Positions 1 to 23,783 of a DNA stretch of 64,000 nt are shown one piece after another. Location: positions 152,502-216,501 of the IMG/VR virus record IMGVR_UViG_3300043219_000566. One strand, written 5' to 3'. A program made the position numbers and the translations under genes. Each line of letters starts with the position of its first letter. Within the stretch, counting starts at the first letter, position 1. The notes below the pieces were generated by a model. The model searched no databases and had not been told where the DNA came from. It saw only the letters and a list, made by a program, of their open reading frames with translations.

Positions 1-797
1 TTGGTATAGCGCTCGCCCAGCGTTTCCTGAGTGACTTCGGGGTCCAGCTGCATCTTCGCAAACGTTTCCTGCAGATCCCTCACCTTGTTGACGGGATCGT
101 CGGGCGAACGCTCGCCGTCCCCCAGCGCCGCCCGCCGCTGGGTGAATTTGGCCCAGGCTTTATCGAGATGCCGGACGTTGTCCTGCAGGGAATTGCTAGC
201 CAGTAGATCGCGGCCCCAGGCCTTCGATAGCTGCTCGTTGGTCACACCCAACGAACGCAGCAACGTGTAAAGCGGAAATTTCGACTGCCCAACCCGTACA
301 TGAAACACGCCGCTCTCCGCGTCCATAAAGACCCGGAAGCCCGGCCCGGAGCCAGGCATGATATTGAAGTGGCTCTCCAGCTCACCAGTCTCTTTCTTGC
401 GCGTGTAAACGCCGGGCTTGAGGCGCATCTGGTTGGCGAGCGTGTACTCGTTACCTCTGTAGATGAACGTGCCGCGGTCGGAGACGTGCGGAACCATCGC
501 AACCCGGCTTCGCCGCTCATCGATCACCTGCCCAGTCGCCTTGTCGATCATGCGCCAGGTGCCAGACAGCGAGCGGTGCATCGTCTTTCCGCCGATGATC
601 GCGCGCTTCTGCCGCTCCAGCCCGGCGGGCTCAGGCTGATCGTAATCGACATCGCCCAGCTCCACGCGGTACTGCGTGTTCTCGATCGGATAGTGATCCT
701 GAGATGATTGACGTACGTTAGCGTAGACGCGCTGGCGCAAGGCGCTCACATCGTCGAAAGCCCGAGTCGTTGGTTCCTTGGTTCCAAGCACATCCAC
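1..797 (-). CDS. rpoB: Phage-encoded DNA-directed RNA polymerase beta subunit-like protein, N-terminal part (runs off window start)
   Basis: Hand translation from GTG at 797: MDVLGTKEPTTRAFDD...RVAMVPHVSDRGTFIYRGNEYTLANQMRLKPGVY...KFPLYTLLRSLG. This matches RpoB motifs IPxMTxxGTFIINGxERVxVSQLxRSPGVY and KIPxxxLLRALG. The frame is open to position 1 and is not in the ORF track. Confidence 0.85.
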   Translation of the reverse strand, partial: MDVLGTKEPTTRAFDDVSALRQRVYANVRQSSQDHYPIENTQYRVELGDVDYDQPEPAGLERQKRAIIGGKTMHRSLSGTWRMIDKATGQVIDERRSRVAMVPHVSDRGTFIYRGNEYTLANQMRLKPGVYTRKKETGELESHFNIMPGSGPGFRVFMDAESGVFHVRVGQSKFPLYTLLRSLGVTNEQLSKAWGRDLLASNSLQDNVRHLDKAWAKFTQRRAALGDGERSPDDPVNKVRDLQETFAKMQLDPEVTQETLGERYT

Positions 798-813
798 AAT
801 TCACCCAACACCT

Positions 814-2007
814 CTACGAGTACGCCGGAGCCCCGTAGCCCGGCCACTTCTGCTGCTGTCGAGGATTATTCAGCAAATAGGCCATCAAGCGCCCCACCAC
901 CGGGCGCTGCTGAGTCATGCGCTGCGTAATCGCGGGCATCATCTGCTGGTAGATCTGGCCCATAACGTGCGGATTACTCAACATGTGCTGAGTTTGCGAG
1001 CGCATGAACTTCGGGTCCTTCATCAGATCCTTTGTCCGCGCAGAAGCCCACCGTCTTCCCAGATCCGTGTTCGTCATCAGCCAACTCAGACCGAGCCCCG
1101 TGCCCGCCGACGTCCCCAAATGACGCAAAGCACGTCCAATTGCAGCGCGCTTATCGTACGCAGTCTTGGATAGATCGCTGTCGCGGTAAGGATTATCGTT
1201 GGGTTTCTCTTCCTCGTCGTCGTCGGTCTGCGTGTGAGACTCCACCTGGGGGCGAGCCATCAAGCTAACCGGGCGCTCGGCCCGCCGACGACGCTGCGCC
1301 TCGCGGTAGGCCTTCAACTCGTCGGCCTGATCGCCCGCGCCGACCATACGCCAGCCGCCGTAAGCCCCCAGCCCAGCCATGATCGCCGCAATTGTTATCG
1401 CAGTAGGCTTAATGCCTCTGCCCACATTGCCGACTGCTTTCACTGCCGACGAACCCGGTATCCAATCCGCGACCTTCCCCAGCGTCTCGTTCAACTCGCC
1501 CTGCTCGTACGCCTCGGCCAAAGCGTGCAAGTCCACCGAGAACTTCAGCGTGCGCTCCTCGGCCAGCGCATCCTCGAACTCCTGCTTGGCTTTGTCCAGC
1601 TCTTGCTGCTCGCGATGACGACGATAGGTCTTCATCAGCTTGCCCATTCCGGCCCAACCAGCAGCTCCCGCCAGCGGCGGGCCGATTACTGCAGCCGGAG
1701 CGAACCAGTCCGGACGTGGCTTACCGTCGAACAACGCCGACTTCACCGGCAACGAGATCTCGTAGCGCGGCTTCTCGTCCAGATCGCGGTCACGTTTGCG
1801 CCGAAGATTCCGCGCTATGTTTCCGTAGACCCCAACCGCGCCACGTGTCGCGGCTCCAGCAGCCAGCATAGCCAGCAGCAACTTGCCGAGATCCTTAGCA
1901 GCGTACTGGTTCACAAAAGTGTCGGCTTGCCCGCGCGTCATAGACGAACGCGACTGCGTCGGCTGCGTCGCAGATGAGCGTGCACAACGTTTCGTTAAAG
2001 CCAGCAT
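814..2007 (-). CDS. Hypothetical virion/head-associated protein with Gly/Ala-rich hydrophobic segments and K-x-A motifs
   Basis: GGAGGT RBS upstream of ATG; motifs VKSA, GKVA, SKTA, DKRA; three hydrophobic G/A-rich stretches each followed by basic residues. Confidence 0.6.
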   Translation of the reverse strand: MLALTKRCARSSATQPTQSRSSMTRGQADTFVNQYAAKDLGKLLLAMLAAGAATRGAVGVYGNIARNLRRKRDRDLDEKPRYEISLPVKSALFDGKPRPDWFAPAAVIGPPLAGAAGWAGMGKLMKTYRRHREQQELDKAKQEFEDALAEERTLKFSVDLHALAEAYEQGELNETLGKVADWIPGSSAVKAVGNVGRGIKPTAITIAAIMAGLGAYGGWRMVGAGDQADELKAYREAQRRRRAERPVSLMARPQVESHTQTDDDEEEKPNDNPYRDSDLSKTAYDKRAAIGRALRHLGTSAGTGLGLSWLMTNTDLGRRWASARTKDLMKDPKFMRSQTQHMLSNPHVMGQIYQQMMPAITQRMTQQRPVVGRLMAYLLNNPRQQQKWPGYGAPAYS

Positions 2008-2011
2008 CCGG

Positions 2012-2470
2012 TTACCTCCGGCGAAGAATACCGGGCTCAGCCTGCGAGTACTGTCGCTGGCTCATGGTGTCGTAGGTAAACACCTCGACCCACTCTAACA
2101 AGATCGTCCAGTTGTCATTGACAAACTGCCGATCGACCGCCGTGATAATAGCACTGCCGCGTTGTGCCATCGAGTAAACCAAAGACGCCACCATCTCGTA
2201 CCGCTTCTTGTCCTCAGCATTTCCGATATTGAACAACTCGCAACGGATACGACCGGCCGTCTGCGGTTGCAAGTGCTCCGGATCATCCTTCCGCAGGTAA
2301 CGAACACCGCGTGCTCGATGCGGTACACCGTCGAGCCCTTGAAAGGTCTGGTACCCATTGTCGTTCTCGCCACTCAGCGAGGAAATTACGCTCGCCAGCG
2401 GATCGCCCGGGTTAACCGAAGCAACCGGCTGTGAGTGGTGACCACTACCCTGTTCTCCGTTCTCGTTCAC
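2012..2470 (-). CDS. Hypothetical protein
   Basis: Co-directional ORF packed between neighbours. Confidence 0.6.
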   Translation of the reverse strand: MNENGEQGSGHHSQPVASVNPGDPLASVISSLSGENDNGYQTFQGLDGVPHRARGVRYLRKDDPEHLQPQTAGRIRCELFNIGNAEDKKRYEMVASLVYSMAQRGSAIITAVDRQFVNDNWTILLEWVEVFTYDTMSQRQYSQAEPGILRRR

Positions 2471-2765
2471 GTCGTGTACGCTCCCTGACCTCTTGAGCCA
2501 GTTGTCGGTACTGAGCCGCCAACTCCTGCGTCTTTAGCTCGCTCACATCGAGGTCGTCGGCCCGCGAAGCATGTCGGGCACCCATGCCCACAAGCGCGCC
2601 GCCAGCCAACGGTAAGCCCAGCGCTAGCGCCAAGCCGCCCTTTCCGAGTGAGCCAAGCAGCGAGTTGGCTACCTTCTCCACCGCTACTTCGATGTCGCCG
2701 GGAGTGAGCCCTATTTCCGCCAGCTTGGTCAAAAATCCGATTTTGAACTGCTCTGCGTTCCGCAC
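2445..2765 (-). CDS. Small hypothetical protein with hydrophobic segment and K-x-A motifs
   Basis: TKLA, EKVA motifs; GGLALALGLPLAGGALVGMGA hydrophobic stretch. Confidence 0.6.
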   Translation of the reverse strand: MRNAEQFKIGFLTKLAEIGLTPGDIEVAVEKVANSLLGSLGKGGLALALGLPLAGGALVGMGARHASRADDLDVSELKTQELAAQYRQLAQEVRERTRRERERRTG

Positions 2766-2874
2766 GGGCTCTGCTCCACAGCTCCAGGCTATTCGCCTGG
2801 GTCCTTACGTCGTAGTCTTCCGCGACTTTACCCTAACCAGCTCCCGACCCCAAATCACGACTCCTCGCTACTAG

Positions 2875-3279
2875 CTACGGACCAGCCGACGAGCTTTCCT
2901 CAGCAGGCGACGCAGCAGCCGACGAGCTTTCCTCAGCAGGCGACGCAGCAGCCGAGGAGCTTTCCTCAGCAGGCGACGCAGCAGCCGAGGAGCTTTCCTC
3001 AGCAGGCGACGCAGCAGCCGAGGAGCTTTCCTCGTCCGGCGGCACCACGGCGATCGGAGGAAGCCGAGACTCAAACTTCGGCTTCACGCCGCTAGGACCG
3101 CCGCCACGTCCGCCGTAGGTCTCGTGCTGGGCCAAATCGTCCAGCGGAATATCCACCCCCGCACCCGGCCGTCCGCCACGGCGCGTATCCGGCAGAATCT
3201 GCCCGATCGGCGTAGCTTCCTGCTGCTGCCCGGTGCGGTCGCTCACTCGCGGCTTAACATGTTCGTCAGAACTACTCAT
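2875..3279 (-). CDS. Hypothetical low-complexity protein with EESSSAAASPA tandem repeats
   Basis: GAGGT RBS + ATG; C-terminal half is encoded by the 33-bp repeat. Confidence 0.65.
   Translation of the reverse strand: MSSSDEHVKPRVSDRTGQQQEATPIGQILPDTRRGGRPGAGVDIPLDDLAQHETYGGRGGGPSGVKPKFESRLPPIAVVPPDEESSSAAASPAEESSSAAASPAEESSSAAASPAEESSSAAASPAEESSSAGP
2883..3033. repeat. 33-bp coding tandem repeat, about 4.6 copies
   Basis: Unit cagccga(c/g)gagctttcctcagcaggcgacgcag, head-to-tail with no spacers. Confidence 0.95.
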
Positions 3280-3293
3280 TTTGCTTACCTCAC

Positions 3294-5051
3294 TTAGCGA
3301 AAGTGTTTGTTCGCGCGCTCAGACTCCATGCGCTTCAACCACGCGCAGTGACCATCCGACCAGTCTTTGTTGTGCATAGGAATGCGCACAGCGAAATCCG
3401 GGTCCATGGCTTGCTCTGTTACCGCGCGCATGGCGCGCAAGTATAGCTGGCCAGGCTCCGACGCGGTTTTCTTCAACTCGTTACCGCTACCCGTCGGTTT
3501 GTAACCCTGCCGCCCGTAAAAACCCGTCAGCTGCTCGTTGTTTAGCGGACGGTCACTAAAGGCGTCGACCTTCAGGCACAACGATTTACCTTTGTGCTCA
3601 CCCTCGGCCACGGCTAGCAGATACTTGGCTAGCCCCTGCCGACGATGAGGCTTGCGTACTTGCAAGCTGCCAACAGTGAGCTTGCCGTTACCGCCCCGCA
3701 TAACTCGTACCGCGCCAGCCAACTTGCCGTCGTCGGTATCAACGTAGTAGCTCTTGAGCGACGGGCGCTCCGAGCGCCGCAACTTGTACCCGTCGGGAGT
3801 GGCCACAGATCGTTTGGTCATGAAGCTCTTGAGCGCTGAGTAAATCAGCGCCGAGCCGATATTCGTGTTCTTCAACCAGCGCGGAGCACCTAGCAGCTTG
3901 GAAACGGCCCAAGCACCCCCGGCCGCCGGGACCGCGTGGACCACGACCTTGGGCAACGCCTTTATCAAAGCTCCGGCGCTGGCTAACCCAGTTCGTCCAA
4001 CACCTTGTTCCTGTCCAGCTTGCGCGACAAGCTGCTTCATCAGCACCCGGTGGCTACCGGGGATCGCCGGGTTCGTAGCGATCTCGTCCATGGCTTGCGC
4101 CACAGGAAACGTCGGGTTCCAAAGCGCCTCGCTGTAGACCATCGGGTCCGCCGCGCCTTCCTTGATCTCCTCGGGCGCTCTGGTCGCGCGTGGGCGGCCC
4201 AACGAAGCTCGCAAGAAGCGCATCATCTCCTGGGGATTCTGCGGCGCACCGCCGGGGTGGAAGAACTTCCCGTAGACTCCCTTGCGCGACAAACCGAGCA
4301 CGGCACCGGGGGTAAGCCCGGCACCGAGCCCAGCAAGAGTGAAGAATCGACGCGCCGCTCGACGGTCTAAGCCAAGCAGACGCGAGAGCAGGGGGGCCGC
4401 CAGATAGCGGCCAGCCAGAGCACCACCAGCCCCGCCAGCAGCCAACCAAGCTGGTACGTTAGTCTTCCAGCTAGGCTTGCCGTACACGGATGGATCATCT
4501 CCGGCAGTTTTCAACGCGCGCAACGAAATCGAAGTCTTCCGCCCGCCCTTCTGGGCAAACAACACCTCGTTGAACGTGTGGGTTCTTCCCTCCAGATCAT
4601 TGCGGTCTGCGTACCGTTGACCGCGCCCCTTCTTGACCCGGGCTACAGTCACGTGCGGCTGGTACTGAGGATGATTCTCCGTGTGCGGCAACAGCCGCTT
4701 GAGCCGCGCGTTGATCCGCCGCAGATCCGGGCTGAAGACCTTCACCACAACCACATCGTCGCCGTCGGTGTGCTTCGAGGCCGGGAAGCACTCGGTGCGC
4801 CCGAAGCGCACGTGGATCGACGGCTCGGCAGTCAGAATAGCGCGCACCGGCTCAGCATTCGCGGTGTGCAGCCCGTATTTCAACGTGATGTGATGACTCG
4901 TCCGTACAGCAGAAACCAGATCCTCAGACCGGATGTCCTGCGCGATTCGCCGTACCGCGGCCGACAACTCCTCCGGCAAGTTGACTTGAGTCGAAGCGAA
5001 CTCGTAAGCCGACTTTTCGATCGCGTCGAGATAGCACAGGAACGAACGCAT
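3294..5051 (-). CDS. Multidomain protein: 2H phosphoesterase (Acb1/gp57B-like) + hydrophobic central region + GNAT acetyltransferase
   Basis: Two HxT motifs (HHITLKYGLH, QPHVTVARV); GNAT motif A (LQVRKPHRRQGLAKYLL) and motif B (LTGFYGRQGY); domains bounded by EKSA, LKTA, TKRS, KKTA. Confidence 0.75.
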   Translation of the reverse strand: MRSFLCYLDAIEKSAYEFASTQVNLPEELSAAVRRIAQDIRSEDLVSAVRTSHHITLKYGLHTANAEPVRAILTAEPSIHVRFGRTECFPASKHTDGDDVVVVKVFSPDLRRINARLKRLLPHTENHPQYQPHVTVARVKKGRGQRYADRNDLEGRTHTFNEVLFAQKGGRKTSISLRALKTAGDDPSVYGKPSWKTNVPAWLAAGGAGGALAGRYLAAPLLSRLLGLDRRAARRFFTLAGLGAGLTPGAVLGLSRKGVYGKFFHPGGAPQNPQEMMRFLRASLGRPRATRAPEEIKEGAADPMVYSEALWNPTFPVAQAMDEIATNPAIPGSHRVLMKQLVAQAGQEQGVGRTGLASAGALIKALPKVVVHAVPAAGGAWAVSKLLGAPRWLKNTNIGSALIYSALKSFMTKRSVATPDGYKLRRSERPSLKSYYVDTDDGKLAGAVRVMRGGNGKLTVGSLQVRKPHRRQGLAKYLLAVAEGEHKGKSLCLKVDAFSDRPLNNEQLTGFYGRQGYKPTGSGNELKKTASEPGQLYLRAMRAVTEQAMDPDFAVRIPMHNKDWSDGHCAWLKRMESERANKHFR

Positions 5052-5606
5052 CTACCTCGGTCTTCCGAAGACCGCCTTGAAGTAGTTAGGAATTCGAGGG
5101 CGCGCGTACTGCGCCGCGTTGTACCCCATCGGCAACATGCCGGGTCCGACAGCGTTCATGTACTGCTGCGCTTGCGGACCTATCCCGGCTATTCTCCGAC
5201 TTCTAGGATCGCCAACCGGAAAGCCGTGAATATTCCTCTCGCCTTGATTCGCGTCCGGCGGCTGACCACCAAACAGTTTTCCGAGTCCCGCCGCGCCCGC
5301 CGCGAAACCAACTGTGGACTTCGGGTACTTGTAGAGCCAGTACGCCGAGCTAAGCGGATTGGGAATTACCCCGGCTACACTGCCACCGAATGCAGCCAAG
5401 TCGGCTTTGCCGCCTCGGAGCATCTTCGGTAGCAGCGGCTCAGGCGTAGCCTTCCCGAACGTCGTCGCGCGCTGCGCCCAGTTCTTAGCAACCGGCGCAG
5501 CCTTTTGCGCTTTAGAAGCCAGCCATGGCAATGCTTTGCTAGCAAAGCGGCCTGCAGACTTGTCCATGGCCAACCGCTCACCAAGTTGGTAAGCGTAGCT
5601 CGGCAT
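5052..5606 (-). CDS. Hypothetical virion-associated protein
   Basis: RBS + ATG; MDKSA motif near N-terminus; G/A-rich. Confidence 0.6.
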   Translation of the reverse strand: MPSYAYQLGERLAMDKSAGRFASKALPWLASKAQKAAPVAKNWAQRATTFGKATPEPLLPKMLRGGKADLAAFGGSVAGVIPNPLSSAYWLYKYPKSTVGFAAGAAGLGKLFGGQPPDANQGERNIHGFPVGDPRSRRIAGIGPQAQQYMNAVGPGMLPMGYNAAQYARPRIPNYFKAVFGRPR

Positions 5607-5615
5607 GAACCACCT

Positions 5616-6036
5616 CTACAGAGTTTTCTTTTCGCTCTGCGCAGGCGGGTCGCCCGCTGGAGCAGGCGCACGCGCCCGCAAGCGGCCTACCAACCCGGCA
5701 GCGCCGATCGGCGCAGAAGCCCCTGCCGCCGCCGCCACTGGTGCCGGGGCTGGCGGCGGAGCAGGCGGCATCGGCATAGAATGCTTGAGCAAGCCCGCCT
5801 GTTTGAGCAACGTGAAATTCGTCACGAGGTTAGCCGCTCTGCGAACCGCGGCAACTTTCTCTTCCTTCTTCATGGGAAGTCCCTTGTGCTTGGTCTTGGC
5901 GAAATCCAACGCATCAGACTTAGAGATCGTCTTCGCCGTCTCGGCGACCTCCTTGGACGGTGGGCTGATGTCGCCCTTCTGCACAGCGTGTACCATCCCG
6001 AAAAAAGCGCTGTTGCTTGCGTGATTTAGCAGGAAC
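5616..6036 (-). pseudogene. DUF3008-like small phage protein with apparent frameshift (or sequence error)
   Basis: AAGGAGGT RBS (6049-6042), then VPAKSRKQQRFF in one frame and FFGMVHAVQKG...DFAKTKHKGLP in the next; frames switch in a T6 run (6001-6006). Confidence 0.6.
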
Positions 6037-6079
6037 AGTACACCTCCTTCCGCAACCGCGCACACGCGGCACAAGCTAC

Positions 6080-6304
6080 CTAGATTTGCGGCCGCGCAAC
6101 ACCCGGCGCAGCCACTGTGGGCTTGCCAGCCTTGGGAGACTTACGCGCCAGAAGCTGACCGGCCAAGTGGCCAAATTGCCCAATCTGGCCTCCGCCCCCG
6201 CCTACCTCGGGTCCAACAACCTTGTCTCCAGCAGGCGGAATCCCGGCAGCCTTCATCAACTCGACGTTGACAACCGCTGCAGCCAAATCATCCATATCAC
6301 TCAT
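6080..6304 (-). CDS. Small hypothetical protein (MKAA motif)
   Basis: GAGGAG RBS before ATG at 6304 (MSDMDD...). Confidence 0.55.
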   Translation of the reverse strand: MSDMDDLAAAVVNVELMKAAGIPPAGDKVVGPEVGGGGGQIGQFGHLAGQLLARKSPKAGKPTVAAPGVARPQI

Positions 6305-6314
6305 GCTCGTCTCC

Positions 6315-7268
6315 TCAAAATCGTTCTCCGCGCTGATGGCGCGCCCACAAATCCGGGAACATGCCCGGCATGTTAGCCTGCAACACATCCGGCCTGCCAC
6401 GATAATCGCGCAGCCACCGATTAAACGAATTTACGCGTTGTTTCGCCGGGTCGGTTTCCGCCGCTTCGCGATTGGCCCGCAGTGTCTTCGCTACGTTACC
6501 GCTAATTTCAGGAATATCGTGCGTTACTGCTTTCGCCGTCGCAAGAGGCGCATAAATCATTCGCTGCTCAAACGACGGACCCGGCAACTCCGCTCCAGCC
6601 ATCGCTAATCCGGCTCGCGCTTTCCAACCTATACCAGGAACGAAATGAAGCGCACCCTGGCCAGCTGCGCCTACTCCTTCACCAACTCGGCGTGACCATG
6701 ACTTTTGCCGCTCTGTGTCGTTGTAAGCATCTACCGCACCATGCAAATCGCCTTTCCATACTTTCTGAAAAAACGGCGACCAGAAAGGTTCATCACCTGA
6801 GTCTTGCGCGCTTTGAGCAGGCTGCTCCTCGCGCATGATCTTCAACCCGCGGCCCAGCTGGCTGCCCAGCGTGTTCCGCGGCATGGACTGCAAACCTTGA
6901 TGTACGATATGGTTAAACGCCATCGCTCCGGCGTTGGGCACCGGCTTCCCCAGATCTGAGTAGTTGAAGCCTCCAGACTTGATCACTGACGGCGGCGTCG
7001 AACGACGTTTCTTCTTCAGCAACATTTTCCAATGCCGCTGCCGATCAGCTTCCGAGACCGACGCACGCTTGCGAACCGACCCGACCAACTGCACGTAGAA
7101 TTCAGCCACGTCGCTGCGCTTGGGCATCGGCTTGCGCCCGGAACGCCAGGGCATGATCTTGTTATGCACCCGGGAATCGATGTCGGCATGCGCCTTGGCC
7201 GATTCACTGGCCGGAACCGTCGCCGAGACGCTGACAGCCGACTTTACCAATTCAAGCAGCGTGAGCAT
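6315..7268 (-). CDS. Hypothetical virion-associated protein
   Basis: VKSA, RKRA, IKSG motifs; directly downstream of the portal-like gene. Confidence 0.6.
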   Translation of the reverse strand: MLTLLELVKSAVSVSATVPASESAKAHADIDSRVHNKIMPWRSGRKPMPKRSDVAEFYVQLVGSVRKRASVSEADRQRHWKMLLKKKRRSTPPSVIKSGGFNYSDLGKPVPNAGAMAFNHIVHQGLQSMPRNTLGSQLGRGLKIMREEQPAQSAQDSGDEPFWSPFFQKVWKGDLHGAVDAYNDTERQKSWSRRVGEGVGAAGQGALHFVPGIGWKARAGLAMAGAELPGPSFEQRMIYAPLATAKAVTHDIPEISGNVAKTLRANREAAETDPAKQRVNSFNRWLRDYRGRPDVLQANMPGMFPDLWARHQRGERF

Positions 7269-7311: not shown

Positions 7312-7323
7312 GTAGCGCGCTAC
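7312..7323. repeat. 12-bp palindrome GTAGCGCGCTAC (overlaps portal TAG stop)
   Basis: Exact sequence; one of at least 7 copies. Confidence 0.9.
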
Positions 7324-9134
7324 ATCCCGCCCGGTGCCCCGCCCGGTGCCCCACCCGCCATCTGGGCGATGACCTGGTCCTGACCAACGCTCCGGGCTTG
7401 GCTGCGCATGTTCTGGAGCTTCTGCTTCACCACGGCATGCAGAGTCTCGTCGGTCTGCCGCAACTGGTTGAGCTGGCGTCGTCGCTCACCTTCCGGCATC
7501 GCCAGCAGCTGCTGAGCCATCTGCTCAGCCTGATCGAGCACATCTCCCGGCTGCATCGCCCCTCCGCCACCGCCGCCGCCCGGCATCCCCGGCGCACCAC
7601 CACCAGCAGCCATCGGTGGCATCCCCTGACGGGCCGCGCTGGTTTCGTTCAACCGTCGCTGCATATCCTGCGCCTGCATCTCTTCCTTCTCGATCTTCTG
7701 CTGCTCCTCGCGCAACATGCGTTGCTCGTCGAAGATGCGCCGGATCTCGTCGCGCACGTCGATCCCAAACGGAGCCAACGCCGTCTGATCCGAGATCTTG
7801 TTCGCAGCCGACAACTGCAACCGGACCAACCGCGCTTCCATGTCGTCAGCGCGAGTGACCGGAGTCATACGCCCACGCGCTCGCTCCCAGTTGAAAACCA
7901 TCGAGAGATTTTCGAGCAGCCAGTTTATCCAGTTGTTGAACCCGGCAACCAGGTGCGGCCACGTTGCCTCGAACAGCCGCAAAGCCGGAGGCATGGCCTT
8001 TAGCTCCAACGAGCCCTTGTAGAGATCTGCCGGGACGCCGCACGAATTAAGCAGCTCGTCCAGCGCCACCGTTATCAGCTCGTGCGGTGCAAGCTGATTA
8101 GCCTCGCCGCCCAGCGCCTGATACTCAATTGGAAAAGGCAAACTGTGCATCGCGAGTGGATCACGCCGATGCTCGGCAATCATGCCGCGCACCCGCGACG
8201 AGAAATTGCCCAAGTTAGCGTTCAGCAGCGGATCGACTTTGCCCTGCGGACCGCCCGGACGTCCGGGCGTAACTACGCGCCAGGGCACGATGTAGTCCAT
8301 GGCCAGCGCCTCGTTGTAGCGCTTGAGCACCTGGATGTAGAACCCCTGCTTGAAATTCGACAAGGCCCGTGGGATACCCCAGCCGCGGTTGTGCAGCCCC
8401 GCCAGCGTGTCCTCCTTGAGATGGAACACGATGCCGTCGTTGAACCCGAACAACTGATCCTTCTGGATCGCTTCAATGTATTCCCAGGGGGTGTACTGCA
8501 AATAGAACGGCACGCCACGCTGGATCTGACTTTTGAAATCTTGAGGAATACGCCACAAGTAACGGTGGTCGTGGCTAAGCGGATGGAACAAAATCTCCAT
8601 CTGGTGCGGGCTCCAGCGGATGATCCGCAACCGGTCCTGCTCCATCGAGCGGCGGTCCACCACATCGAACTCGCCGTTGCATTTACACTTCGGGCACTGC
8701 CCGTAGAACTTAAAGCCCCGGAACGTATAGAGCATACGCTCGATCGGACGATCCAACTTGCAGCTCTTGCAACGCAGATAGCGTCGGAACGGAACGAAAA
8801 TGCTCGTAAACGAGTTACCGTAGAACAGAAAATCGAGCCCCACCATCCGCAGTTGCGCAGCGACTCGCAGCGTATCGTCCAGAAATTCGTTGTACTGCTT
8901 CTTGATCTCGTCGGCGACGTCCAGGATCTCGACCTTGGTCAGGAAATACGCACACACGCGCTCCAGCGCCATCCGGTACGTACCGTTGTGCGCCCAGAAC
9001 AACTCACACCAGCGGAGCATGCTCCGCAAGTTGCGAGGCGTGTACATCCCGGAGTAGTCGAGGAAAGGGTCGGGAAACCACTGAACCCCGCCGCTGGACC
9101 CGGACGATGAGTTAGGAACAATGCTATCTGGCAT
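7320..9134 (-). CDS. Portal-like protein with internal CxxC...CxxC zinc ribbon
   Basis: 604 aa; portal-type motifs DFLFYGNSF, WGIP, LLNSCGVPADLYKG; Q/G/M-rich low-complexity C-terminus; CKSC...CPKC insert. Confidence 0.65.
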   Translation of the reverse strand: MPDSIVPNSSSGSSGGVQWFPDPFLDYSGMYTPRNLRSMLRWCELFWAHNGTYRMALERVCAYFLTKVEILDVADEIKKQYNEFLDDTLRVAAQLRMVGLDFLFYGNSFTSIFVPFRRYLRCKSCKLDRPIERMLYTFRGFKFYGQCPKCKCNGEFDVVDRRSMEQDRLRIIRWSPHQMEILFHPLSHDHRYLWRIPQDFKSQIQRGVPFYLQYTPWEYIEAIQKDQLFGFNDGIVFHLKEDTLAGLHNRGWGIPRALSNFKQGFYIQVLKRYNEALAMDYIVPWRVVTPGRPGGPQGKVDPLLNANLGNFSSRVRGMIAEHRRDPLAMHSLPFPIEYQALGGEANQLAPHELITVALDELLNSCGVPADLYKGSLELKAMPPALRLFEATWPHLVAGFNNWINWLLENLSMVFNWERARGRMTPVTRADDMEARLVRLQLSAANKISDQTALAPFGIDVRDEIRRIFDEQRMLREEQQKIEKEEMQAQDMQRRLNETSAARQGMPPMAAGGGAPGMPGGGGGGGAMQPGDVLDQAEQMAQQLLAMPEGERRRQLNQLRQTDETLHAVVKQKLQNMRSQARSVGQDQVIAQMAGGAPGGAPGGM

Positions 9135-16714: not shown

Positions 16715-19700
16715 CTAACCACACGCGCCTTCGCCACAGACAGAGCACTTCTGACAACCTTCGGCCCATACCAGCTCTCCCAGACAATCGAGTGTCTGAC
16801 AAGGCACCCGATACGTGCCGGTCATCGCCATAGCGCTATTCACGCGATCCAAAAAAGCCTGAGAGCGCTCGACCCCGTGTCCGTTGCCGCCAGAGACCTG
16901 CGCCGCAGCTACAACAGAAGAAGCGACAGGCTCGGGCCGCTTGTTCGGACCAGGGCGCACATCGGGCAGCTGGGTCAGAAAACCGTCGTCGTCGCGGAAA
17001 GCCTGGGTCTTAGCGAAATAGCTCAACAGCGCCATAGCCAGCTCGTTGGGTGGGCTAGTAGCCTTGTTGCTGCTGCCGTTACGAGAGGGGTGGTTGCCCA
17101 GCACGTGACTACGCATCTGCTCGATAACCAATTCCAGGCTACCGTCCAAGCGCAAGATCAAACTAGCTAAGCGCCCAAAGACCTCGATCATCGGGTGTAC
17201 GCCGTCGCCGGACCGCCCCAGGTTGAAGAACAGCTCTCGCTCGCGATAGCGCCCATCCGGGGTCAGCTCCAGCGAGATCTGCATGTGCAGATTACCGTAA
17301 GCGCTGTGGTAACGCGTGCGTGTCGCGTGCATGAACTCCGGGATCTCGACCGGAACACGGAAGTGCGGAACATCCGGTACGACCAGGACCTCGTCTTGCT
17401 CGCTGGATTTACTCAACGCCATCGGCTGATTCGCTCGACAGCCGTTTCGGTACACCGTCACGCCCTTGCAACGACTCGCGTAAGCCAGAATGTACGCCTC
17501 GCGCACGCTGCTCTCAGTAGCTTCGTGCGGCATGTTGATCGTCTTGCTGATCGAACTCGTCGTATGTCGCTGAAACGCGGCCTGCATCCGCACGTGCCAC
17601 TCCGGGCTCACATCGCGCGCCGTACGGAAAATCTCCTTCATCGGAGCGGGTACCTTCTTGGCATCCTGCAACGTGCCGTTGTCGAACATGTGCTGCTGTA
17701 GCTCCGGGCTATCGAACTGCTGTTGCTGCGCCAACTCAGCGAAATCGGGATGGCACTCCATCATCGTCTCGCCCCCGAGTATCTGGCGCTGGAACACGAA
17801 GCTGAACAACGGCTCGATGCCGCAGCTAGCGTTGGCGATGATGCTGATCGTGCCGGTCGGGGCCACGCTGGTCACGCAGGCATTACGCAGCGGGCGATCG
17901 AGACGCGCAGCCCAACGACTTTGCTCGTAGTTCTCGAACGCACCCCGTTCCTCTGCTAGACCCTGGCTAGCGCTAATCGCATTGTCGTTGACGAACTTCA
18001 TAAAGCGTTCGCCCCACCGCAAGCCCCCCTCCGAGTCGTAACGCACCCCCAGCCGAATCAACGCATCGGCAAAGCCCATGACGCCCAAGCCGATTTTGCG
18101 ATTGGTGTGGCAAATCCGCTCGATGTTCTCAGTGGGGTAGCGATTCACCGATACCACGTTGTCAAGAAGCCGCGTAGAAGTGCAGATGTCATCCTGCAGC
18201 CGGTCCCAGTCCACCAGATCATCACGCTCGTCCGCGCTAAGACTATCCGGGTTACAGGCATCGGGATGCTCGATGTAAAACGGACGCACGTAGCGCCCTA
18301 AGTTGAGCGAGCCCAAGTTACAGGACTCGTTCGGCATCAGCGGCTGTTCCCCGCAGTTACACGACACCACGCCCGACCACAAGCCCGCAGCAGAATCGCC
18401 GCGGTATTCCGGGTCAACGATCACGTAAGTATGCACATCATCGACGGTCCCGTTGTACACGGCAGCACGCCCAGCTGATCGAATCGCAACCACCTTGTGG
18501 TTGTCTCCGTAATAGCGCCTTACACCATCAGCAATCTTGGCATGCACCTCGGCCGCAGCAGTCTTCCAGCCGTGGCGTCCAAACCCGCCTGCCTCGCGCT
18601 CCGGGTAATGACGGCTATTATGTTCTTCCGGCGTCATAACCCGCAGGTTCTCGGGGCGATTGTTGTCCGGGTTTCTATCGATATGGTCGGTTACAAGGCC
18701 CTCGGGTATTTCTACGCCGAAGCAATCCAGCGCCATGCGATGGACCCACTGATGCGCGCAGCGATTAGCCACCCACGCGTGAGCACGCTGGTGGCCGTCG
18801 CGATGCCGCGAGACTGCGTAAGCCCGAACTGACTGCCCGATCCGCAGGTCTTGCGCCGTGATCTTATTGCCACGAAACGTCCGAAAGTTGTGGCCCGCCG
18901 TACAGCGAACTTTGAGCCCGCTGTCGAACTCGACCTCGATGATGTCTGCGGCGTGCTCTGTTCGCCGAATATCACGCATCATGCGGATTACAGGCAGCTT
19001 AGTATCGGAGTCCCACGCATGAACCAACGTGCTCCCGACGCCGGATTCGACCAGCTCCTCAAATGAACGCGGGCCGTCAATAGTCAAGATCTGCGTATCG
19101 CCAGTTACGCATGGATTAGTAGCTTGGATCAACCCCGCCGCAGGCGTAGCTTCCGACTCCCGGATACGGTCGATGAAGAACAACCCCGGTTCACCGGTCT
19201 GCCAGGCATTCTTGACGATCAAGTCCATCACATCGCCAACCGTCAGATATTGATCCTGCTCTCCAGCGACAATTGCCTGGCCCGTCAGCGTCAGATCCTG
19301 AATGCCGTAGCAAATATCCATCTCCCGCGGCTGCCCGTCGCTGGCAACTCCCGCCTGCACCGCTTTACGGCACCGCTCAACGATCTCTTTGGGTATAAGC
19401 CAGCCGTCCCCCTCGCGATCCGGCCAAGTCACGATGAAAGGCGCTCCCGGACGCTTGGTAACGAGTTCCATGAACTCGTCGTCGACCTTCACGCTGATGT
19501 TGTAGTTCTCGAACTGGCGCAAGTCCTGCTTAGCGAACAGGAACTTGATGATATCGGGATGGTTGACCCGCATCATCGCCATGTTGGCTCCCCGGCGGAA
19601 ACTGCCCTGCTGGATCGCCGACGTAGCCTCGCTGAACACGCGCCAGAACGCAATCGGGCCGCTGGACTGCCCGCCGCTCGAACTGACGAACGCCCCACAG

Positions 19701-20173
19701 GGGCGTAATTCGTCGAAAGCAAAACCGGTGCCACCCCCGGCCTTCTGGATGATGGCCGTGTCCTTGATCGCCTGAAAAATGCCACGAGTATCGTCTGGCA
19801 CCGGCAGCACGAAGCACGCGCTCAACAACCCCATCCGTCTGCCGCTGTTCATCAGCGTTGGACTATTGGGCATGAAGCGGCCGGAGCGCATCAGTTCGTA
19901 GAACCGCCCGCTCCACTCGTCACGCTGCGCCTCGTCCTCGCATCCAGCGACGTGGTCAGCCACGCGCTTGAACATCTCGTCGGGCGTTTCCGTGATCTCC
20001 CGTTCGTTCCGTATGAGATAGCGATTACGCAGAACTCGAACTGCGTTTTCAGTGAGAACTGGAACTTCGGGAACAATAGCCGACGCGGTACGTGACAATG
20101 TTGACACAACCCACTCCTTCGACGCTATGGGTTCGACGCTATTAGCGACCGTACATAAGGTGTACGGCGTCAC
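16715..20173 (-). CDS. nrdJ: Class II (adenosylcobalamin-dependent) ribonucleotide reductase with intein; C-terminal TSCPD-like and Zn-ribbon domains (start codon uncertain)
   Basis: FMPNSPTLMN, LSACFV, GGGTG, RRGANM, GEPG, ATNP/CGE, ESCNLGSLNL, RKIGLGVMG, APTGTISI, SISKTIN, KGVTVYR. Confidence 0.95.
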   Translation of the reverse strand: MTPYTLCTVANSVEPIASKEWVVSTLSRTASAIVPEVPVLTENAVRVLRNRYLIRNEREITETPDEMFKRVADHVAGCEDEAQRDEWSGRFYELMRSGRFMPNSPTLMNSGRRMGLLSACFVLPVPDDTRGIFQAIKDTAIIQKAGGGTGFAFDELRPCGAFVSSSGGQSSGPIAFWRVFSEATSAIQQGSFRRGANMAMMRVNHPDIIKFLFAKQDLRQFENYNISVKVDDEFMELVTKRPGAPFIVTWPDREGDGWLIPKEIVERCRKAVQAGVASDGQPREMDICYGIQDLTLTGQAIVAGEQDQYLTVGDVMDLIVKNAWQTGEPGLFFIDRIRESEATPAAGLIQATNPCVTGDTQILTIDGPRSFEELVESGVGSTLVHAWDSDTKLPVIRMMRDIRRTEHAADIIEVEFDSGLKVRCTAGHNFRTFRGNKITAQDLRIGQSVRAYAVSRHRDGHQRAHAWVANRCAHQWVHRMALDCFGVEIPEGLVTDHIDRNPDNNRPENLRVMTPEEHNSRHYPEREAGGFGRHGWKTAAAEVHAKIADGVRRYYGDNHKVVAIRSAGRAAVYNGTVDDVHTYVIVDPEYRGDSAAGLWSGVVSCNCGEQPLMPNESCNLGSLNLGRYVRPFYIEHPDACNPDSLSADERDDLVDWDRLQDDICTSTRLLDNVVSVNRYPTENIERICHTNRKIGLGVMGFADALIRLGVRYDSEGGLRWGERFMKFVNDNAISASQGLAEERGAFENYEQSRWAARLDRPLRNACVTSVAPTGTISIIANASCGIEPLFSFVFQRQILGGETMMECHPDFAELAQQQQFDSPELQQHMFDNGTLQDAKKVPAPMKEIFRTARDVSPEWHVRMQAAFQRHTTSSISKTINMPHEATESSVREAYILAYASRCKGVTVYRNGCRANQPMALSKSSEQDEVLVVPDVPHFRVPVEIPEFMHATRTRYHSAYGNLHMQISLELTPDGRYRERELFFNLGRSGDGVHPMIEVFGRLASLILRLDGSLELVIEQMRSHVLGNHPSRNGSSNKATSPPNELAMALLSYFAKTQAFRDDDGFLTQLPDVRPGPNKRPEPVASSVVAAAQVSGGNGHGVERSQAFLDRVNSAMAMTGTYRVPCQTLDCLGELVWAEGCQKCSVCGEGACG
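18356..19111 (-). mobile_element. Intein (252 aa) carrying an HNH homing endonuclease, inserted in the RNR NP|CGE active-site motif
   Basis: Starts CVTGDT after ATNP; block B CTAGH; VHR...DHIDRNPDNNRPENL...H HNH motif; block F VYNGTV; ends VVSCN followed by CGEQPL. Confidence 0.93.
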
Positions 20174-21993: not shown

Positions 21994-22005
21994 GTAGCGC
22001 GCTAC
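21994..22005. repeat. 12-bp palindrome GTAGCGCGCTAC (overlaps thyX TAG stop)
   Basis: Exact sequence. Confidence 0.9.
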
Positions 22006-23195: not shown

Positions 23196-23783
23196 CTACC
23201 TGTCGTCGAGCGCTTGTTCAAAACATCGGCACCGCACCGGATGCTGCAGCTTGCGTATAGCCTGCGCCTCTATTTGCCGCGCCCGTTCTCTAGACACGCC
23301 GATGATTTTGCCTATTTCCTCCCACTCATGGGGTTCGGTAACCGAGCCAAGCCCCAACCGCAATTCGATCACCAAACGATGTCGCTCGGACAATGTCCAC
23401 TTGACCCTGTCCCAGATCTCGCTGACCGTGGCTTCGGTAGAGGACAACACGGCCAACGGAGACGGAGCCACCAGCCGCGCCTGCGCGCCCGCGGCAGCAA
23501 GCAAACGCTCGGTAGTCGCGTGCTTGTACATCACGCGCTCCATCCCGAGCTTCATCCCGCCGAGTTCAGGAGGACAAATATCCTCGGGCTCCGAGCCAAG
23601 CAATGAAGCAATCGCAACGAGGCTACTCAACGACGTTTGACTGAAGTCCATCCGTTCAACAGCGCCCCAGGATGTTGTAGAAACCCCGGCCAAGCTCGCC
23701 GCGGCACTCTGGCTCAATTTGCGCTGACGACGAAAGCGGATCAACGATCCGCTCCGTGTTTTAGCAATTACGGCAATTTCCAT
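23196..23783 (-). CDS. XRE-type HTH fused to sigma70 region 4 domain
   Basis: RRQRKLSQSAAASLAGVSTTSWGAVE (HTH_3); LSERHRLVIELRLGL...EEIGKIIGVSRERARQIEAQAIRKLQHP (sigma 4.2). Confidence 0.85.
   Translation of the reverse strand: MEIAVIAKTRSGSLIRFRRQRKLSQSAAASLAGVSTTSWGAVERMDFSQTSLSSLVAIASLLGSEPEDICPPELGGMKLGMERVMYKHATTERLLAAAGAQARLVAPSPLAVLSSTEATVSEIWDRVKWTLSERHRLVIELRLGLGSVTEPHEWEEIGKIIGVSRERARQIEAQAIRKLQHPVRCRCFEQALDDR

What the first reader, a model, noticed from the sequence alone, without database searches (positions are those of the whole stretch)
1..797. Phage-encoded multisubunit RNA polymerase beta-like gene next to head genes, absent from the ORF track
Seen: an open - strand frame from 797 off the window edge carrying RpoB N-terminal motifs (VPHVSDRGTFIYRGNEYTLANQMRLKPGVY; KFPLYTLLRSLG), compact and divergent. 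Its neighbours are virion-type genes, not rplL/rpoC. Established: only some large phages encode double-psi-barrel multisubunit RNAPs. Inference: sitting directly downstream of portal/head-protein genes, it may be a virion-packaged polymerase of a little-studied jumbo phage lineage.
Basis: partly seen in the sequence, partly recalled or inferred. Interest (0 to 1): 0.65.

Follow-up and report, generated by a model that had tools for sequence, protein, structure and literature searches.

The report
Phage RNA polymerase with fused subunits
The open frame at the window's edge is the start of a large phage gene in which the two catalytic subunits of a bacterial-type RNA polymerase are fused into one chain; it belongs to a widespread and almost unstudied phage lineage that probably carries this enzyme inside the virus particle.

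Summary
Window 797..3 (- strand) holds the first 265 codons of a 1,465-codon gene that continues upstream of the window in a complete 216.5-kb phage genome from marine sediment.

The full protein is more than an RpoB-like subunit. It is a complete beta fused to the N-terminal part of beta', including the catalytic motif GADFDGD. The rest of beta' is a 617-codon gene 2.1 kb downstream. I found no alpha or omega homologue, no second polymerase set, and two sigma-like ORFs.

On my trees the enzyme lies outside six bacteria. It also lies apart from the published mReC phage polymerases, which have separate beta' and beta genes. Its clade includes Salmonella phage Arash, Vibrio phage D69 and many metagenomic contigs. 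In at least 18 of those contigs the whole beta+beta' is one ORF of 2,000-2,500 aa placed just after the portal gene.

Virion packaging is not shown for this phage. Three things support it indirectly:
- The Arash homologue is the most-detected protein in purified virions.
- The gene sits in the morphogenesis block.
- The 2,082 aa of the two chains contain no cysteine.

Verdict: a new variant of a known kind, of moderately high interest.

The parts
3..797 (-). First 265 codons of the 1,465-codon beta::beta'-N RNA polymerase gene. The rest lies before the window, at genome 148,901-152,501 (= L002:13901-17501). The beta'-C gene is at genome 144,921-146,774 (= L002:9921-11774, - strand).
   Evidence: ORF and start codon. 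Completion. Pfam Rpb2_3/Rpb2_6 followed by Rpb1_1/Rpb1_2. PDB beta and beta' matches. beta'-C gene matches Rpb1_5 at 3.5e-23 and PDB beta' residues 573-1165.
814..2007 (-). 397-aa ORF directly upstream, ending 16 nt before the polymerase start. Function unknown. Low complexity, one cysteine, not conserved in relatives.
2012..3279 (-). Three small ORFs (152, 106 and 134 aa). Two contain no cysteine. The 134-aa ORF carries a tandem Ser/Ala/Pro/Glu repeat. Function unknown.
3294..5051 (-). 585-aa protein with an N-terminal 2H phosphoesterase (2'-5' RNA ligase superfamily, weak Acb1 similarity), a Gly/Ala-rich hydrophobic middle and a C-terminal GNAT acetyltransferase. Related 2H and GNAT domains are built into the polymerase chain itself in relatives.
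5052..7268 (-). Three ORFs (184, 152 and 317 aa) between the portal gene and the 2H/GNAT gene. Two contain no cysteine. The 152-aa ORF matches PHROGs of unknown function.
7320..9134 (-). Portal protein homologue. It heads the block in which the polymerase genes lie.
   Evidence: BLASTP against Arash gp204 portal: 25% identity over 562 aa, E 4e-73. Order is colinear with Arash. The portal lies 0.6-4 kb upstream of the polymerase in about 30 IMG/VR loci.
23196..23783 (-). 195-aa ORF with an N-terminal XRE-type HTH and a C-terminal sigma-70 region 4. It is a candidate transcription factor for the phage polymerase. A second sigma-like ORF lies outside the window at genome 112,537-113,394 (-).
   Evidence: The out-of-window ORF matches Sigma70_r3 at 4e-12 and Arash gp10 at 8e-17.

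Best explanation
The frame is the 5' end of a phage gene for a single polypeptide that joins a complete bacterial-type beta subunit to the N-terminal part of beta'. The beta' part runs from about residue 35 through the Mg-binding double-psi barrel and has lost the zinc ribbon. A second gene 2.1 kb downstream supplies the rest of beta' (bridge helix, trigger loop). Together the two chains carry every catalytic element of a multisubunit RNA polymerase. The phage encodes no detectable alpha or omega and no second polymerase set, but it has sigma-like proteins. Inferred mechanism: the covalent beta-beta' tether replaces the alpha-dimer assembly platform. The two-chain core, with a phage sigma-like factor, transcribes phage DNA independently of the host enzyme. 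The enzyme is made with the late morphogenesis genes, packed into the capsid and delivered with the DNA to start early transcription, as in phiKZ, N4 and crAss-like phages. Shown here: gene structure, catalytic residues, lineage and synteny. Inferred: assembly without alpha, use of sigma, packaging and ejection. My odds: identity as a beta::beta' polymerase 0.97; a lineage distinct from bacteria, phiKZ-type and published mReC 0.85; virion packaging 0.55.
For: Structure. Pfam domain order is Rpb2_2/3/6 then Rpb1_1/2 in one ORF, with Rpb1_5 in the downstream ORF. PDB mapping: beta roughly 80-1035, beta' 142/163-550, beta'-C = beta' 573 to about 1165. The GDK...KG lysines and the three aspartates are conserved. 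The beta' N-terminus is present with the Cys4 ribbon excised.
Gene content. Only one Rpb2_6 locus and one Rpb1_2 locus occur in the 216.5-kb genome. No RNA_pol_L, RNA_pol_A_bac or Rpb6 match at E<=10. Sigma-like ORFs are present.
Lineage. The word search gave 1,685 proteins at E<=1e-10, and the best 120 all carry Rpb2_6 and Rpb1_2 in one chain. 227 IMG/VR stretches encode relatives. 18 or more contigs encode the whole beta+beta' as one 2,000-2,500-aa ORF. Tree supports: fused lineage 100, split class (G000, Arash, D69) 99, bacteria 100, mReC 100.
Packaging. The order portal > polymerase > beta'-C > gp218-like > ... > capsid is colinear with Arash. In sucrose-gradient-purified Arash virions gp206 has the most spectra (3,516; 128 unique peptides). 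gp216 (1,210 spectra) and sigma gp10 are also present. Spectra per residue exceed those of the portal (PMC10585845). There are zero cysteines in 2,082 aa against a 1.62% proteome average (P about 1.6e-15). 10 of the 12 cysteine-free ORFs cluster in the structural block. Relatives insert 'polyvalent protein' domains (2H-SAK, SET, GNAT) into the chain.
Against: There is no virion, expression or activity data for this phage. The Arash preparation listed 116 'structural' proteins, including ribonucleotide reductase, and its authors allow carry-over of abundant intracellular enzymes. The lack of cysteine could have other causes. In this phage's nearest metagenomic kin no portal gene lies within 10 kb upstream. 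Absence of alpha/omega and of a second polymerase rests on Pfam-level sensitivity. The first residue of the catalytic motif is Gly instead of the near-universal Asn, so altered activity cannot be excluded. The trees use only six bacteria and no archaeal or eukaryotic outgroup. No enriched intergenic promoter word was found.
Confidence: 0.6

Rival explanations
1. Same enzyme, but not packaged. It acts only inside the infected cell as the phage's middle/late polymerase, as phiKZ nvRNAP or T7 RNAP do. Host polymerase would make the first transcripts, and the position among head genes would be historical accident.
For: There is only one polymerase set, so one enzyme may have to serve the whole cycle. 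The Arash virion list is broad and includes metabolic enzymes, and its authors raise carry-over. No portal lies within 10 kb in the nearest kin.
Against: An enzyme co-oriented with, and 16 nt behind, morphogenesis-block genes would be made late, which is when a non-packaged polymerase is least needed. Arash gp206, gp216 and gp217 give 2.0-2.4 spectra per residue, above the 12-copy portal at 1.5. The polymerase and its neighbours are depleted in cysteine.
Confidence: 0.3
2. It is a member of the published mReC lineage (multisubunit-RNAP-encoding Caudovirales; Weinheimer and Aylward 2020).
For: Both are large uncultured phages with bacterial-like beta/beta' found in IMG/VR. On my trees the two phage groups sit on the same side of the bacteria.
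Against: mReC contigs list separate beta' (about 890-1,300 aa) and beta (about 1,000-1,490 aa) genes, with beta' first (supplement). One of them, 149,482 bp, is my locus L071, which has that layout and is only 20-23% identical to this enzyme. mReC formed its own clan with support 100. Selection for mReC required NADxDGD, and this gene has GADFDGD. mReC capsid and terminase hit PF07068 and PF03237, whereas here the capsid has no Pfam match and the terminase hits PF05876.
Confidence: 0.06
3. It is a cellular rpoB from host or contaminant DNA, or a phiKZ-type split jumbo-phage polymerase.
For: Best PDB and Pfam matches are to bacterial beta and beta'. The genome exceeds 200 kb, like phiKZ-type phages.
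Against: There is no rplKAJL-rpoBC context. The contig has terminase, portal and capsid genes and a 123-nt terminal overlap. Identity to bacteria is 25% on trimmed columns, and the bacteria form their own clan at support 100. phiKZ-type enzymes have beta split into 2-3 chains, two paralogous sets and no sigma (PMC7598289, PMC7824862); none of this holds here. tblastn finds no full-length phiKZ-like match.
Confidence: 0.02

Closest known systems
Salmonella phage Arash gp206 + gp216 (OQ632216; PMC10585845) and Vibrio phage D69 VPHD69_0261 + 0264
   Same: Same two-gene layout: a beta::beta'-N chain of about 1,525 aa plus a beta'-C chain of about 606 aa, broken at the same alignment position. Same order portal > polymerase > beta'-C > structural genes > capsid. 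Sigma-like genes present. Same clade, support 99.
   Different: Only 27-31% identical. In Arash the portal is one small gene away and 4.8 kb (nine genes) separates the two polymerase genes. The motif is AADYDGD rather than GADFDGD. They carry 5-6 cysteines rather than none. The records annotate them simply as 'beta'/'beta'' or as 'hypothetical'; the fusion is not noted in the Arash record's product names or in the passages I read.
mReC polymerases (Weinheimer and Aylward 2020, PMC7481178)
   Same: Bacterial-like beta and beta' in large uncultured tailed phages, detectable with cellular profiles, outside the bacterial clan.
   Different: Separate genes with beta' upstream of beta, an intact short beta', NADFDGD, 0.7-1.75% cysteine, T4-type capsid. 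A separate clan on my trees.
phiKZ / AR9 virion RNA polymerase (PMC7598289, PMC7824862)
   Same: A multisubunit two-barrel enzyme without alpha or omega. beta' is broken after its barrel. It is a packaged enzyme that starts early transcription, which is the model proposed here.
   Different: In phiKZ, beta is in 2-3 pieces and never fused to beta'. There are two paralogous sets and no sigma. The sequences are too divergent for a full-length match.
Cellular beta-beta' fusions (Helicobacter/Wolinella RpoBC, Ca. Adlerbacteria; PMC11515920)
   Same: The C-terminus of beta is joined to the N-terminus of beta' in one reading frame. This shows that the tether is compatible with activity.
   Different: Those are cellular enzymes with alpha and omega and a full beta'. 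Here the junction has lost about 35 residues and the zinc ribbon, and in this phage beta' is cut again after the barrel.
Single-chain virion polymerases: N4 vRNAP, crAss-like gp66, P23-45 tape-measure-fused RNAP (10.1101/2022.12.01.518664)
   Same: Very large single polypeptides delivered from the particle to transcribe early genes. This may explain why one chain is favoured.
   Different: N4 is a T7-like single-subunit enzyme. crAss and P23-45 are minimal two-barrel enzymes without recognisable beta/beta' domains. Delivery is shown for those and not here.
Cyanobacterial/plastid split beta' (gamma + beta')
   Same: The break lies between the beta' barrel and the Rpb1_5 module.
   Different: The break is not at the same residue. 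This phage's break maps about 20-65 residues upstream of the gamma/beta' junction. Its clade has unsplit relatives, so the break is independent.

Membership tests
Two-barrel multisubunit RNA polymerase catalytic core (beta/beta', Rpb2/Rpb1) | beta-type barrel module (Rpb2_6) with the conserved GDK...KG lysines | tested here: met
   Rpb2_6 at 3.8e-44 over residues 570-909. GDK at residue 782 and KG at 792, aligned with bacteria.
Two-barrel multisubunit RNA polymerase catalytic core (beta/beta', Rpb2/Rpb1) | beta'-type barrel with the three-aspartate metal motif (NADFDGD) | tested here: met
   Rpb1_2 at 9.4e-22. ADFDGD at residue 1374 is invariant in 13 relatives, but the first residue is G instead of N.
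Two-barrel multisubunit RNA polymerase catalytic core (beta/beta', Rpb2/Rpb1) | Bridge-helix/trigger-loop module (Rpb1_5) | tested here: met
   Found in the separate 617-aa ORF: Rpb1_5 at 3.5e-23, PDB beta' residues 573-1165.
Bacterial core enzyme alpha2-beta-beta'-omega | alpha (RNA_pol_L / RNA_pol_A_bac) and omega (Rpb6) subunits encoded | tested here: not met
   No match at E<=10 in the whole genome, while all 14 control genomes match. Sensitivity is at Pfam level only. Use of the host's alpha is not excluded.
Chromosomal bacterial rpoB | rplKAJL-rpoB-rpoC context and placement inside Bacteria | tested here: not met
   The context is phage; compare the Salmonella and Acinetobacter loci. The bacteria form their own clan, support 100. 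Only six bacteria were sampled.
phiKZ/AR9-type jumbo-phage RNAPs | beta in 2-3 polypeptides, beta' in 2, and two paralogous sets (virion and non-virion) | tested here: not met
   beta is intact and fused. Only beta' is broken. There is one set only.
phiKZ/AR9-type jumbo-phage RNAPs | No sigma-family factor in the genome | tested here: not met
   A Sigma70_r3 ORF and an HTH+Sigma70_r4 ORF are present.
mReC (Weinheimer and Aylward 2020) | Separate beta' and beta genes of at least 800 aa each, with NADxDGD | tested here: not met
   Here one fused gene plus a 617-aa gene, with GADFDGD. mReC gene tables.
mReC (Weinheimer and Aylward 2020) | Clusters with mReC polymerases; capsid PF07068, terminase PF03237 | tested here: not met
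   Separate clans, each with support 100. The capsid has no Pfam match and the terminase hits PF05876.
Natural beta-beta' fusion (RpoBC type) | beta C-terminus and beta' N-terminus in one reading frame | tested here: met
   The junction was compared with Salmonella beta'. The full beta' is in the same chain only in relatives.
Virion-packaged early RNA polymerase | Protein physically present in purified virions | not testable with these tools
   Known only by homology: Arash gp206/gp216 are the top and fifth proteins by spectra in gradient-purified virions.
Virion-packaged early RNA polymerase | Host-polymerase-independent transcription of early genes from phage promoters | not testable with these tools
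   No RNA run holds the sequence. No enriched intergenic word was found.
Cyanobacterial-type split beta' | Break at the gamma/beta' junction | tested here: not met
   Same inter-module region, but about 20-65 residues upstream. Unsplit kin show an independent origin.

The most novel reading that the evidence does not exclude
A large, cosmopolitan lineage of big tailed phages, with cultured members Arash and Vibrio D69, carries a self-assembling bacterial-type RNA polymerase. Its beta and beta' are one chain, or two after a single later fission. It needs no alpha or omega, has shed its zinc sites and nearly all cysteines, is packed into the capsid with a phage sigma factor, and is injected to run host-independent transcription. 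Some members have built effector enzymes (2H phosphoesterase, SET, GNAT) into the beta lobe, making an injected 'Swiss-army' polymerase. This would be a third, independent route to a packaged multisubunit polymerase, beside phiKZ and crAss/P23-45. It would also be a natural minimal sigma-dependent core.
Probability: 0.4. Interest if true: 0.8.

Novelty: new variant of a known kind. Interest (0 to 1): 0.62.

Why it matters
Phage multisubunit polymerases are known mainly from phiKZ-type phages, where they are highly split and sigma-less, and from the sequence-only mReC group. This gene points to another, much larger group with the opposite architecture: a fused catalytic core. These enzymes stay close enough to bacterial enzymes to align well, keep sigma-like partners, and have a cultured, tractable representative in Arash on Salmonella.

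If the enzyme works without alpha and omega, it is a natural minimal bacterial-type polymerase. That would be useful for studying assembly, sigma recognition and evolution, and possibly as an orthogonal expression tool. If it is packaged, it makes testable how a 230-kDa two-barrel enzyme is stored and passed through a tail.

The fused genes also escape surveys that ask for separate beta and beta' hits. Such surveys may therefore undercount phage-encoded polymerases.

Tried and rejected
- Pfam on the 265-aa in-window fragment alone gave no hit, so the gene had to be completed from the genome.
- Sigma70_r2 search of the genome gave nothing. Sigma-like ORFs appeared only through region 4, region 3 and homology to Arash gp10.
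- My greedy ORF caller mis-called several + strand ORFs over real - strand genes, for example over both sigma-like ORFs. I corrected these by hand.
- An 8-mer enrichment search in 103 intergenic gaps for a phage promoter found nothing convincing. The sigma-70 and terminator scan around the genes was no better than shuffles.
- The genome-contig scan returned only seven phage-like contigs binned into MAGs, with no bacterial rpoB. Bacterial references therefore came from those MAGs' own rpoBC and from mislabelled records in the phage collection. The result is only six bacteria and no archaeal or eukaryotic outgroup.
- MAFFT --auto and a full IQ-TREE bootstrap run hit the time limit. I used FastTree on 48 taxa and treekit 'quick' on 30 taxa instead.
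- I considered and rejected membership in mReC after reading its supplement.
- I tested whether the 759-aa gene after beta'-C matches the Arash helicase gp217. It does not. It matches structural protein gp218 weakly.
- The two 230-aa ORFs between the polymerase genes have no family hits and no counterparts in relatives, so a homing-endonuclease origin of the split could not be shown.
- Literature searches for a described phage beta-beta' fusion found none. This covers only the open-access library.
Full report
1. THE OBSERVATION

On the - strand an ORF starts at a GTG at window 797 and runs off the window (3..797, 265 codons). The start is 16 nt behind the stop of the preceding gene and has a GGTGA-type ribosome-binding site. 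The fragment alone matches no Pfam family.

The window is bases 152,502-216,501 of a 216,501-bp IMG/VR virus record that CheckV rates as complete. The first 123 nt of that record recur at its end with one mismatch. In the whole record the ORF is 1,465 codons long, genome 148,901-153,298. It was 'absent from the ORF track' only because it is cut by the window edge.

2. WHAT THE GENE ENCODES

The full protein matches Rpb2_2 (weakly), Rpb2_3 and Rpb2_6 (3.8e-44) over residues 161-909. It then matches Rpb1_1 and Rpb1_2 (9.4e-22) over residues 1123-1395.

Against solved structures:
- Residues of about 80-1035 align with essentially full-length bacterial beta (best 9e-66).
- Residues 1069-1463 align with beta' residues about 142/163-550.

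The catalytic elements are present: GDK...KG in the beta barrel, and ADFDGD at residue 1374 in the beta' barrel. So this is a beta::beta'-N fusion, not just an RpoB.

Comparison by eye with Salmonella beta' shows that the beta' part begins at about residue 35. The GLF... and ...HI.L..P blocks are kept, but the roughly 33-residue Cys4 zinc ribbon between them is gone. BLASTP itself aligns only from beta' residue 160 onward.

A 617-codon ORF 2.1 kb downstream on the same strand (L002:9921-11774) matches Rpb1_5 (3.5e-23) and beta' residues 573 to about 1165. beta' is therefore broken between about residues 550 and 573, just after its barrel. This is the same inter-module region as the cyanobacterial gamma/beta' and phiKZ breaks, but about 20-65 residues upstream of the cyanobacterial one (PMC7598289).

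The two 230-aa ORFs in the gap have no family hits and no counterparts in relatives.

3. THE REST OF THE TRANSCRIPTION KIT

- The genome has one Rpb2_6 locus and one Rpb1_2 locus.
- It has no match to alpha (RNA_pol_L, RNA_pol_A_bac) or omega (Rpb6) profiles at E<=10, although all 14 control genomes match.
- It has two sigma-related ORFs.
  - The first is a 285-aa protein at genome 112,537-113,394 (-). It matches Sigma70_r3 (4e-12), has a C-terminal HTH, and is homologous to Arash gp10 (8e-17).
  - The second is a 195-aa HTH_3 + Sigma70_r4 protein at window 23196-23783.

4. NEIGHBOURHOOD

Nearly all genes are on the - strand. Upstream of the polymerase gene lie eight ORFs without recognisable structural function. 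One of them is a 2H-phosphoesterase/GNAT protein (window 3294-5051). Beyond them lies a portal homologue (window 7320-9134; E 4e-73 to Arash gp204).

Downstream follow beta'-C, a gp218-like structural protein, further shared structural genes, and the major capsid gene at genome 132,994-133,938.

The order portal > polymerase > beta'-C > gp222-like > capsid > gp233-236-like is colinear with Salmonella phage Arash, at only 25-38% protein identity. Vibrio phage D69 has the same layout.

5. RELATIVES AND ARCHITECTURE CLASSES

- In the phage collection, only Arash and three Vibrio phages (D69, D181, D148) match full-length, at 31% identity. Other long matches are bacterial rpoBC in mislabelled records.
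- The word search found 1,685 proteins at E<=1e-10. The best 120 (at least 47% identical, 1,437-2,447 aa, on contigs up to 235 kb) all carry Rpb2_6 and Rpb1_2 in one chain.
- An IMG/VR scan found 227 stretches encoding relatives.

Reading the ORFs in 80 loci gave three classes:
- Class A: beta::beta'-N plus beta'-C. This class includes this phage, Arash and D69, with gaps of 0.6-4.8 kb between the two genes.
- Class B: the whole beta+beta' as one ORF of about 2,000-2,500 aa, usually 0.6-4 kb after the portal gene. At least 18 independent contigs show this. For example L026 is 2,099 aa with Rpb2_3/6/7 and Rpb1_1/2/3/5 in one chain.
- Class C: separate beta' (about 900 aa) followed by beta (about 1,000-1,400 aa), 20-23% identical to this enzyme.

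6. RELATION TO mReC

The published 'mReC' phages (PMC7481178) are class C. Their supplement lists separate beta' and beta genes with beta' first. One listed contig (3300017989..., 149,482 bp) is my locus L071.

Their selection required separate hits of at least 800 aa to each subunit profile, plus NADxDGD. Neither the mReC table nor the non-mReC table shows a same-protein fusion. mReC capsids and terminases hit PF07068 and PF03237. Here the capsid has no Pfam match and the terminase hits PF05876.

The fused lineage therefore appears not to have been captured there. I found no paper describing it. The Arash paper calls gp206 'beta' and gp216 'beta''; the passages I read do not mention a fusion.

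7. TREES

I concatenated beta and beta' for 48 taxa and kept 1,881 columns. FastTree LG+G gave these support values:

| Split | Support |
|---|---|
| bacteria vs rest | 1.0 |
| mReC vs rest | 1.0 |
| classes A+B vs rest | 1.0 |
| class A | 0.998 |

IQ-TREE (LG+C20+F+G4 PMSF, 30 taxa, 1,599 columns, SH-aLRT) agreed: bacteria 100, mReC 100, A+B 100 on a branch of 0.81, class A 99. Inside A+B there is a polytomy of L032, L025, class A and the remaining class B.

Identity of this enzyme on trimmed columns is 45% to class A, 32% to class B, 25% to bacteria and 22% to mReC.

The most parsimonious reading is one beta-beta' fusion in the ancestor of A+B and one later fission giving class A.

Limits: six bacteria, no archaeal or eukaryotic outgroup, root not inferred, and compositional heterogeneity flagged by the tool.

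8. IS IT PACKAGED?

Not shown for this phage. The indirect support is as follows.

(a) In sucrose-gradient-purified Arash virions, gp206 is the most-detected protein (128 unique peptides, 3,516 spectra). gp216 has 1,210 spectra, and sigma gp10 has 100% coverage. Spectra per residue are:

| Protein | Spectra per residue |
|---|---|
| gp206 | 2.3 |
| gp216 | 2.0 |
| portal | 1.5 |
| capsid | 4.3 |

(PMC10585845.) The authors also list 116 proteins, including metabolic enzymes, and allow for carry-over.

(b) The genes sit, co-oriented and tightly spaced, inside the morphogenesis block across the lineage.

(c) The two chains (2,082 aa) contain no cysteine, against 1.62% for the phage's proteome (P about 1.6e-15).
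- 11 of the 13 class-A relatives outside the Arash/D69 branch also have none.
- Classes A and B mostly have 0-0.4% cysteine (one class-B contig, L038, has 0.62%), against 0.6-0.9% in bacteria and 0.7-1.75% in mReC.
- 10 of the 12 cysteine-free ORFs of at least 100 aa lie in the structural block, including four between the portal and the polymerase.
- This fits proteins that persist outside cells or cross the oxidising periplasm unfolded. That link is my inference.

(d) Relatives insert 2H-SAK, SET and DUF5661 domains at about residues 225-245 (the beta lobe), and GNAT at the N-terminus. As I recall, 2H-SAK and related domains are typical of 'polyvalent' proteins thought to be delivered with phage DNA (Iyer et al. 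2017, not read here); PMC7824862 itself reports ART and GNAT domains in such injected proteins.

Against packaging: the nearest metagenomic kin show no portal within 10 kb upstream, and a single polymerase set may have to serve the whole cycle.

9. MECHANISM PROPOSED

A two-chain core forms from beta::beta'-N and beta'-C. The covalent tether stands in for the alpha-dimer platform; cellular RpoBC fusions show that such a tether is tolerated (PMC11515920). The core is directed by phage sigma-like proteins, made late, packed, and delivered with the DNA to begin host-independent transcription. It then continues through the cycle, because no second enzyme is encoded.

Shown: gene structure, catalytic residues, lineage and synteny. 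Inferred: everything about assembly, sigma use and delivery.

10. NOVELTY

Phage multisubunit polymerases, packaged polymerases and beta-beta' fusions are each known. The combination, and the size of this lineage, are not described in the literature I could search. I rate it a new variant of a known kind.

The source is a marine sediment metagenome, with a single DNA run and no RNA holder.

Noticed in passing
genome 144,921-153,298 (window 3-797 and L002:9921-18298); also window 2445-7268 and genome 116,478-120,206: Both polymerase chains (2,082 aa) contain no cysteine, against a proteome average of 1.62%. 10 of the 12 cysteine-free ORFs of at least 100 aa cluster in the structural block, including a 1,242-aa ORF. 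The whole fused lineage is cysteine-poor (0-0.6%), unlike bacteria and mReC.
   Followed up: partly
P0001 residue 1373 (L002, - strand); relatives L014-L063; Arash and D69: The near-universal Asn of NADFDGD is Gly in this phage and 9 of the 14 other class-A members sampled (GADFDGD), and Ala in Arash and D69 (AADYDGD). Fully fused kin, mReC and bacteria keep Asn. From memory, this Asn contacts the incoming NTP's ribose, so sugar discrimination may differ.
   Followed up: partly
relatives P0016-P0065; insertion point = P0001 residues about 225-245: Many relatives carry 300-700-aa insertions in the beta lobe holding 2H-SAK phosphoesterase, SET or DUF5661 domains, a GNAT at the N-terminus, or inteins (LAGLIDADG/Intein_splicing). 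This phage has no insertion but encodes a separate 2H+GNAT protein four genes upstream.
   Followed up: partly
window 3294-5051 (-): A 585-aa protein combines a 2H phosphoesterase (2_5_RNA_ligase2 at 3.5e-9; weak Acb1 anti-CBASS similarity at 0.0016), a Gly/Ala-rich hydrophobic middle and a GNAT acetyltransferase.
   Followed up: partly
window 16715-20173 (-): The ribonucleotide reductase large subunit (1,152 aa) is interrupted by an intein-like insert with an HNH endonuclease and has a C-terminal TSCPD domain.
   Followed up: no
window 2875-3279 (-): A 134-aa ORF ends in four to five tandem copies of an 11-residue Ser/Ala/Pro/Glu repeat. The overlapping frame reads as an Arg/Leu repeat.
   Followed up: no
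genome 1-123 and 216,379-216,501 (window 63,878-64,000): The contig's first 123 nt recur at its end with one mismatch, although the record is classed 'linear, no end repeats'. The genome is probably complete and either circularly permuted or terminally redundant.
   Followed up: partly
L064-L074 (IMG/VR), e.g. L071:9614-15596: This is a second phage polymerase lineage with beta' (about 900 aa, unsplit) directly upstream of beta. It corresponds to the published mReC set. Its gene order is the reverse of bacterial rpoB-rpoC.
   Followed up: partly
L094, L095 (MAG CAZWRK01 'Aquaspirillum'), L099 (Anaerolineales MAG, 176-kb contig), L100 (Acidobacteriaceae MAG): Fused-polymerase phage contigs are binned into bacterial MAGs in GTDB. 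One 'Aquaspirillum' MAG holds two different ones and no bacterial Rpb2_6 match. These are binning artefacts or weak host hints. L100 matches only residues 63-325.
   Followed up: no
Vibrio phages D181 and D148 (OZ196140, OZ196545), match region 144,170-149,404: In these two isolates the region matching the fused polymerase gene is in two pieces and includes an annotated homing endonuclease. This suggests mobile-element insertion as a route to splitting these genes.
   Followed up: no
window 22002-22817 (-): A 271-aa ORF contains an RHR...S....S.R-like stretch that resembles flavin-dependent thymidylate synthase (ThyX). This was seen by eye only and not scanned.
   Followed up: no
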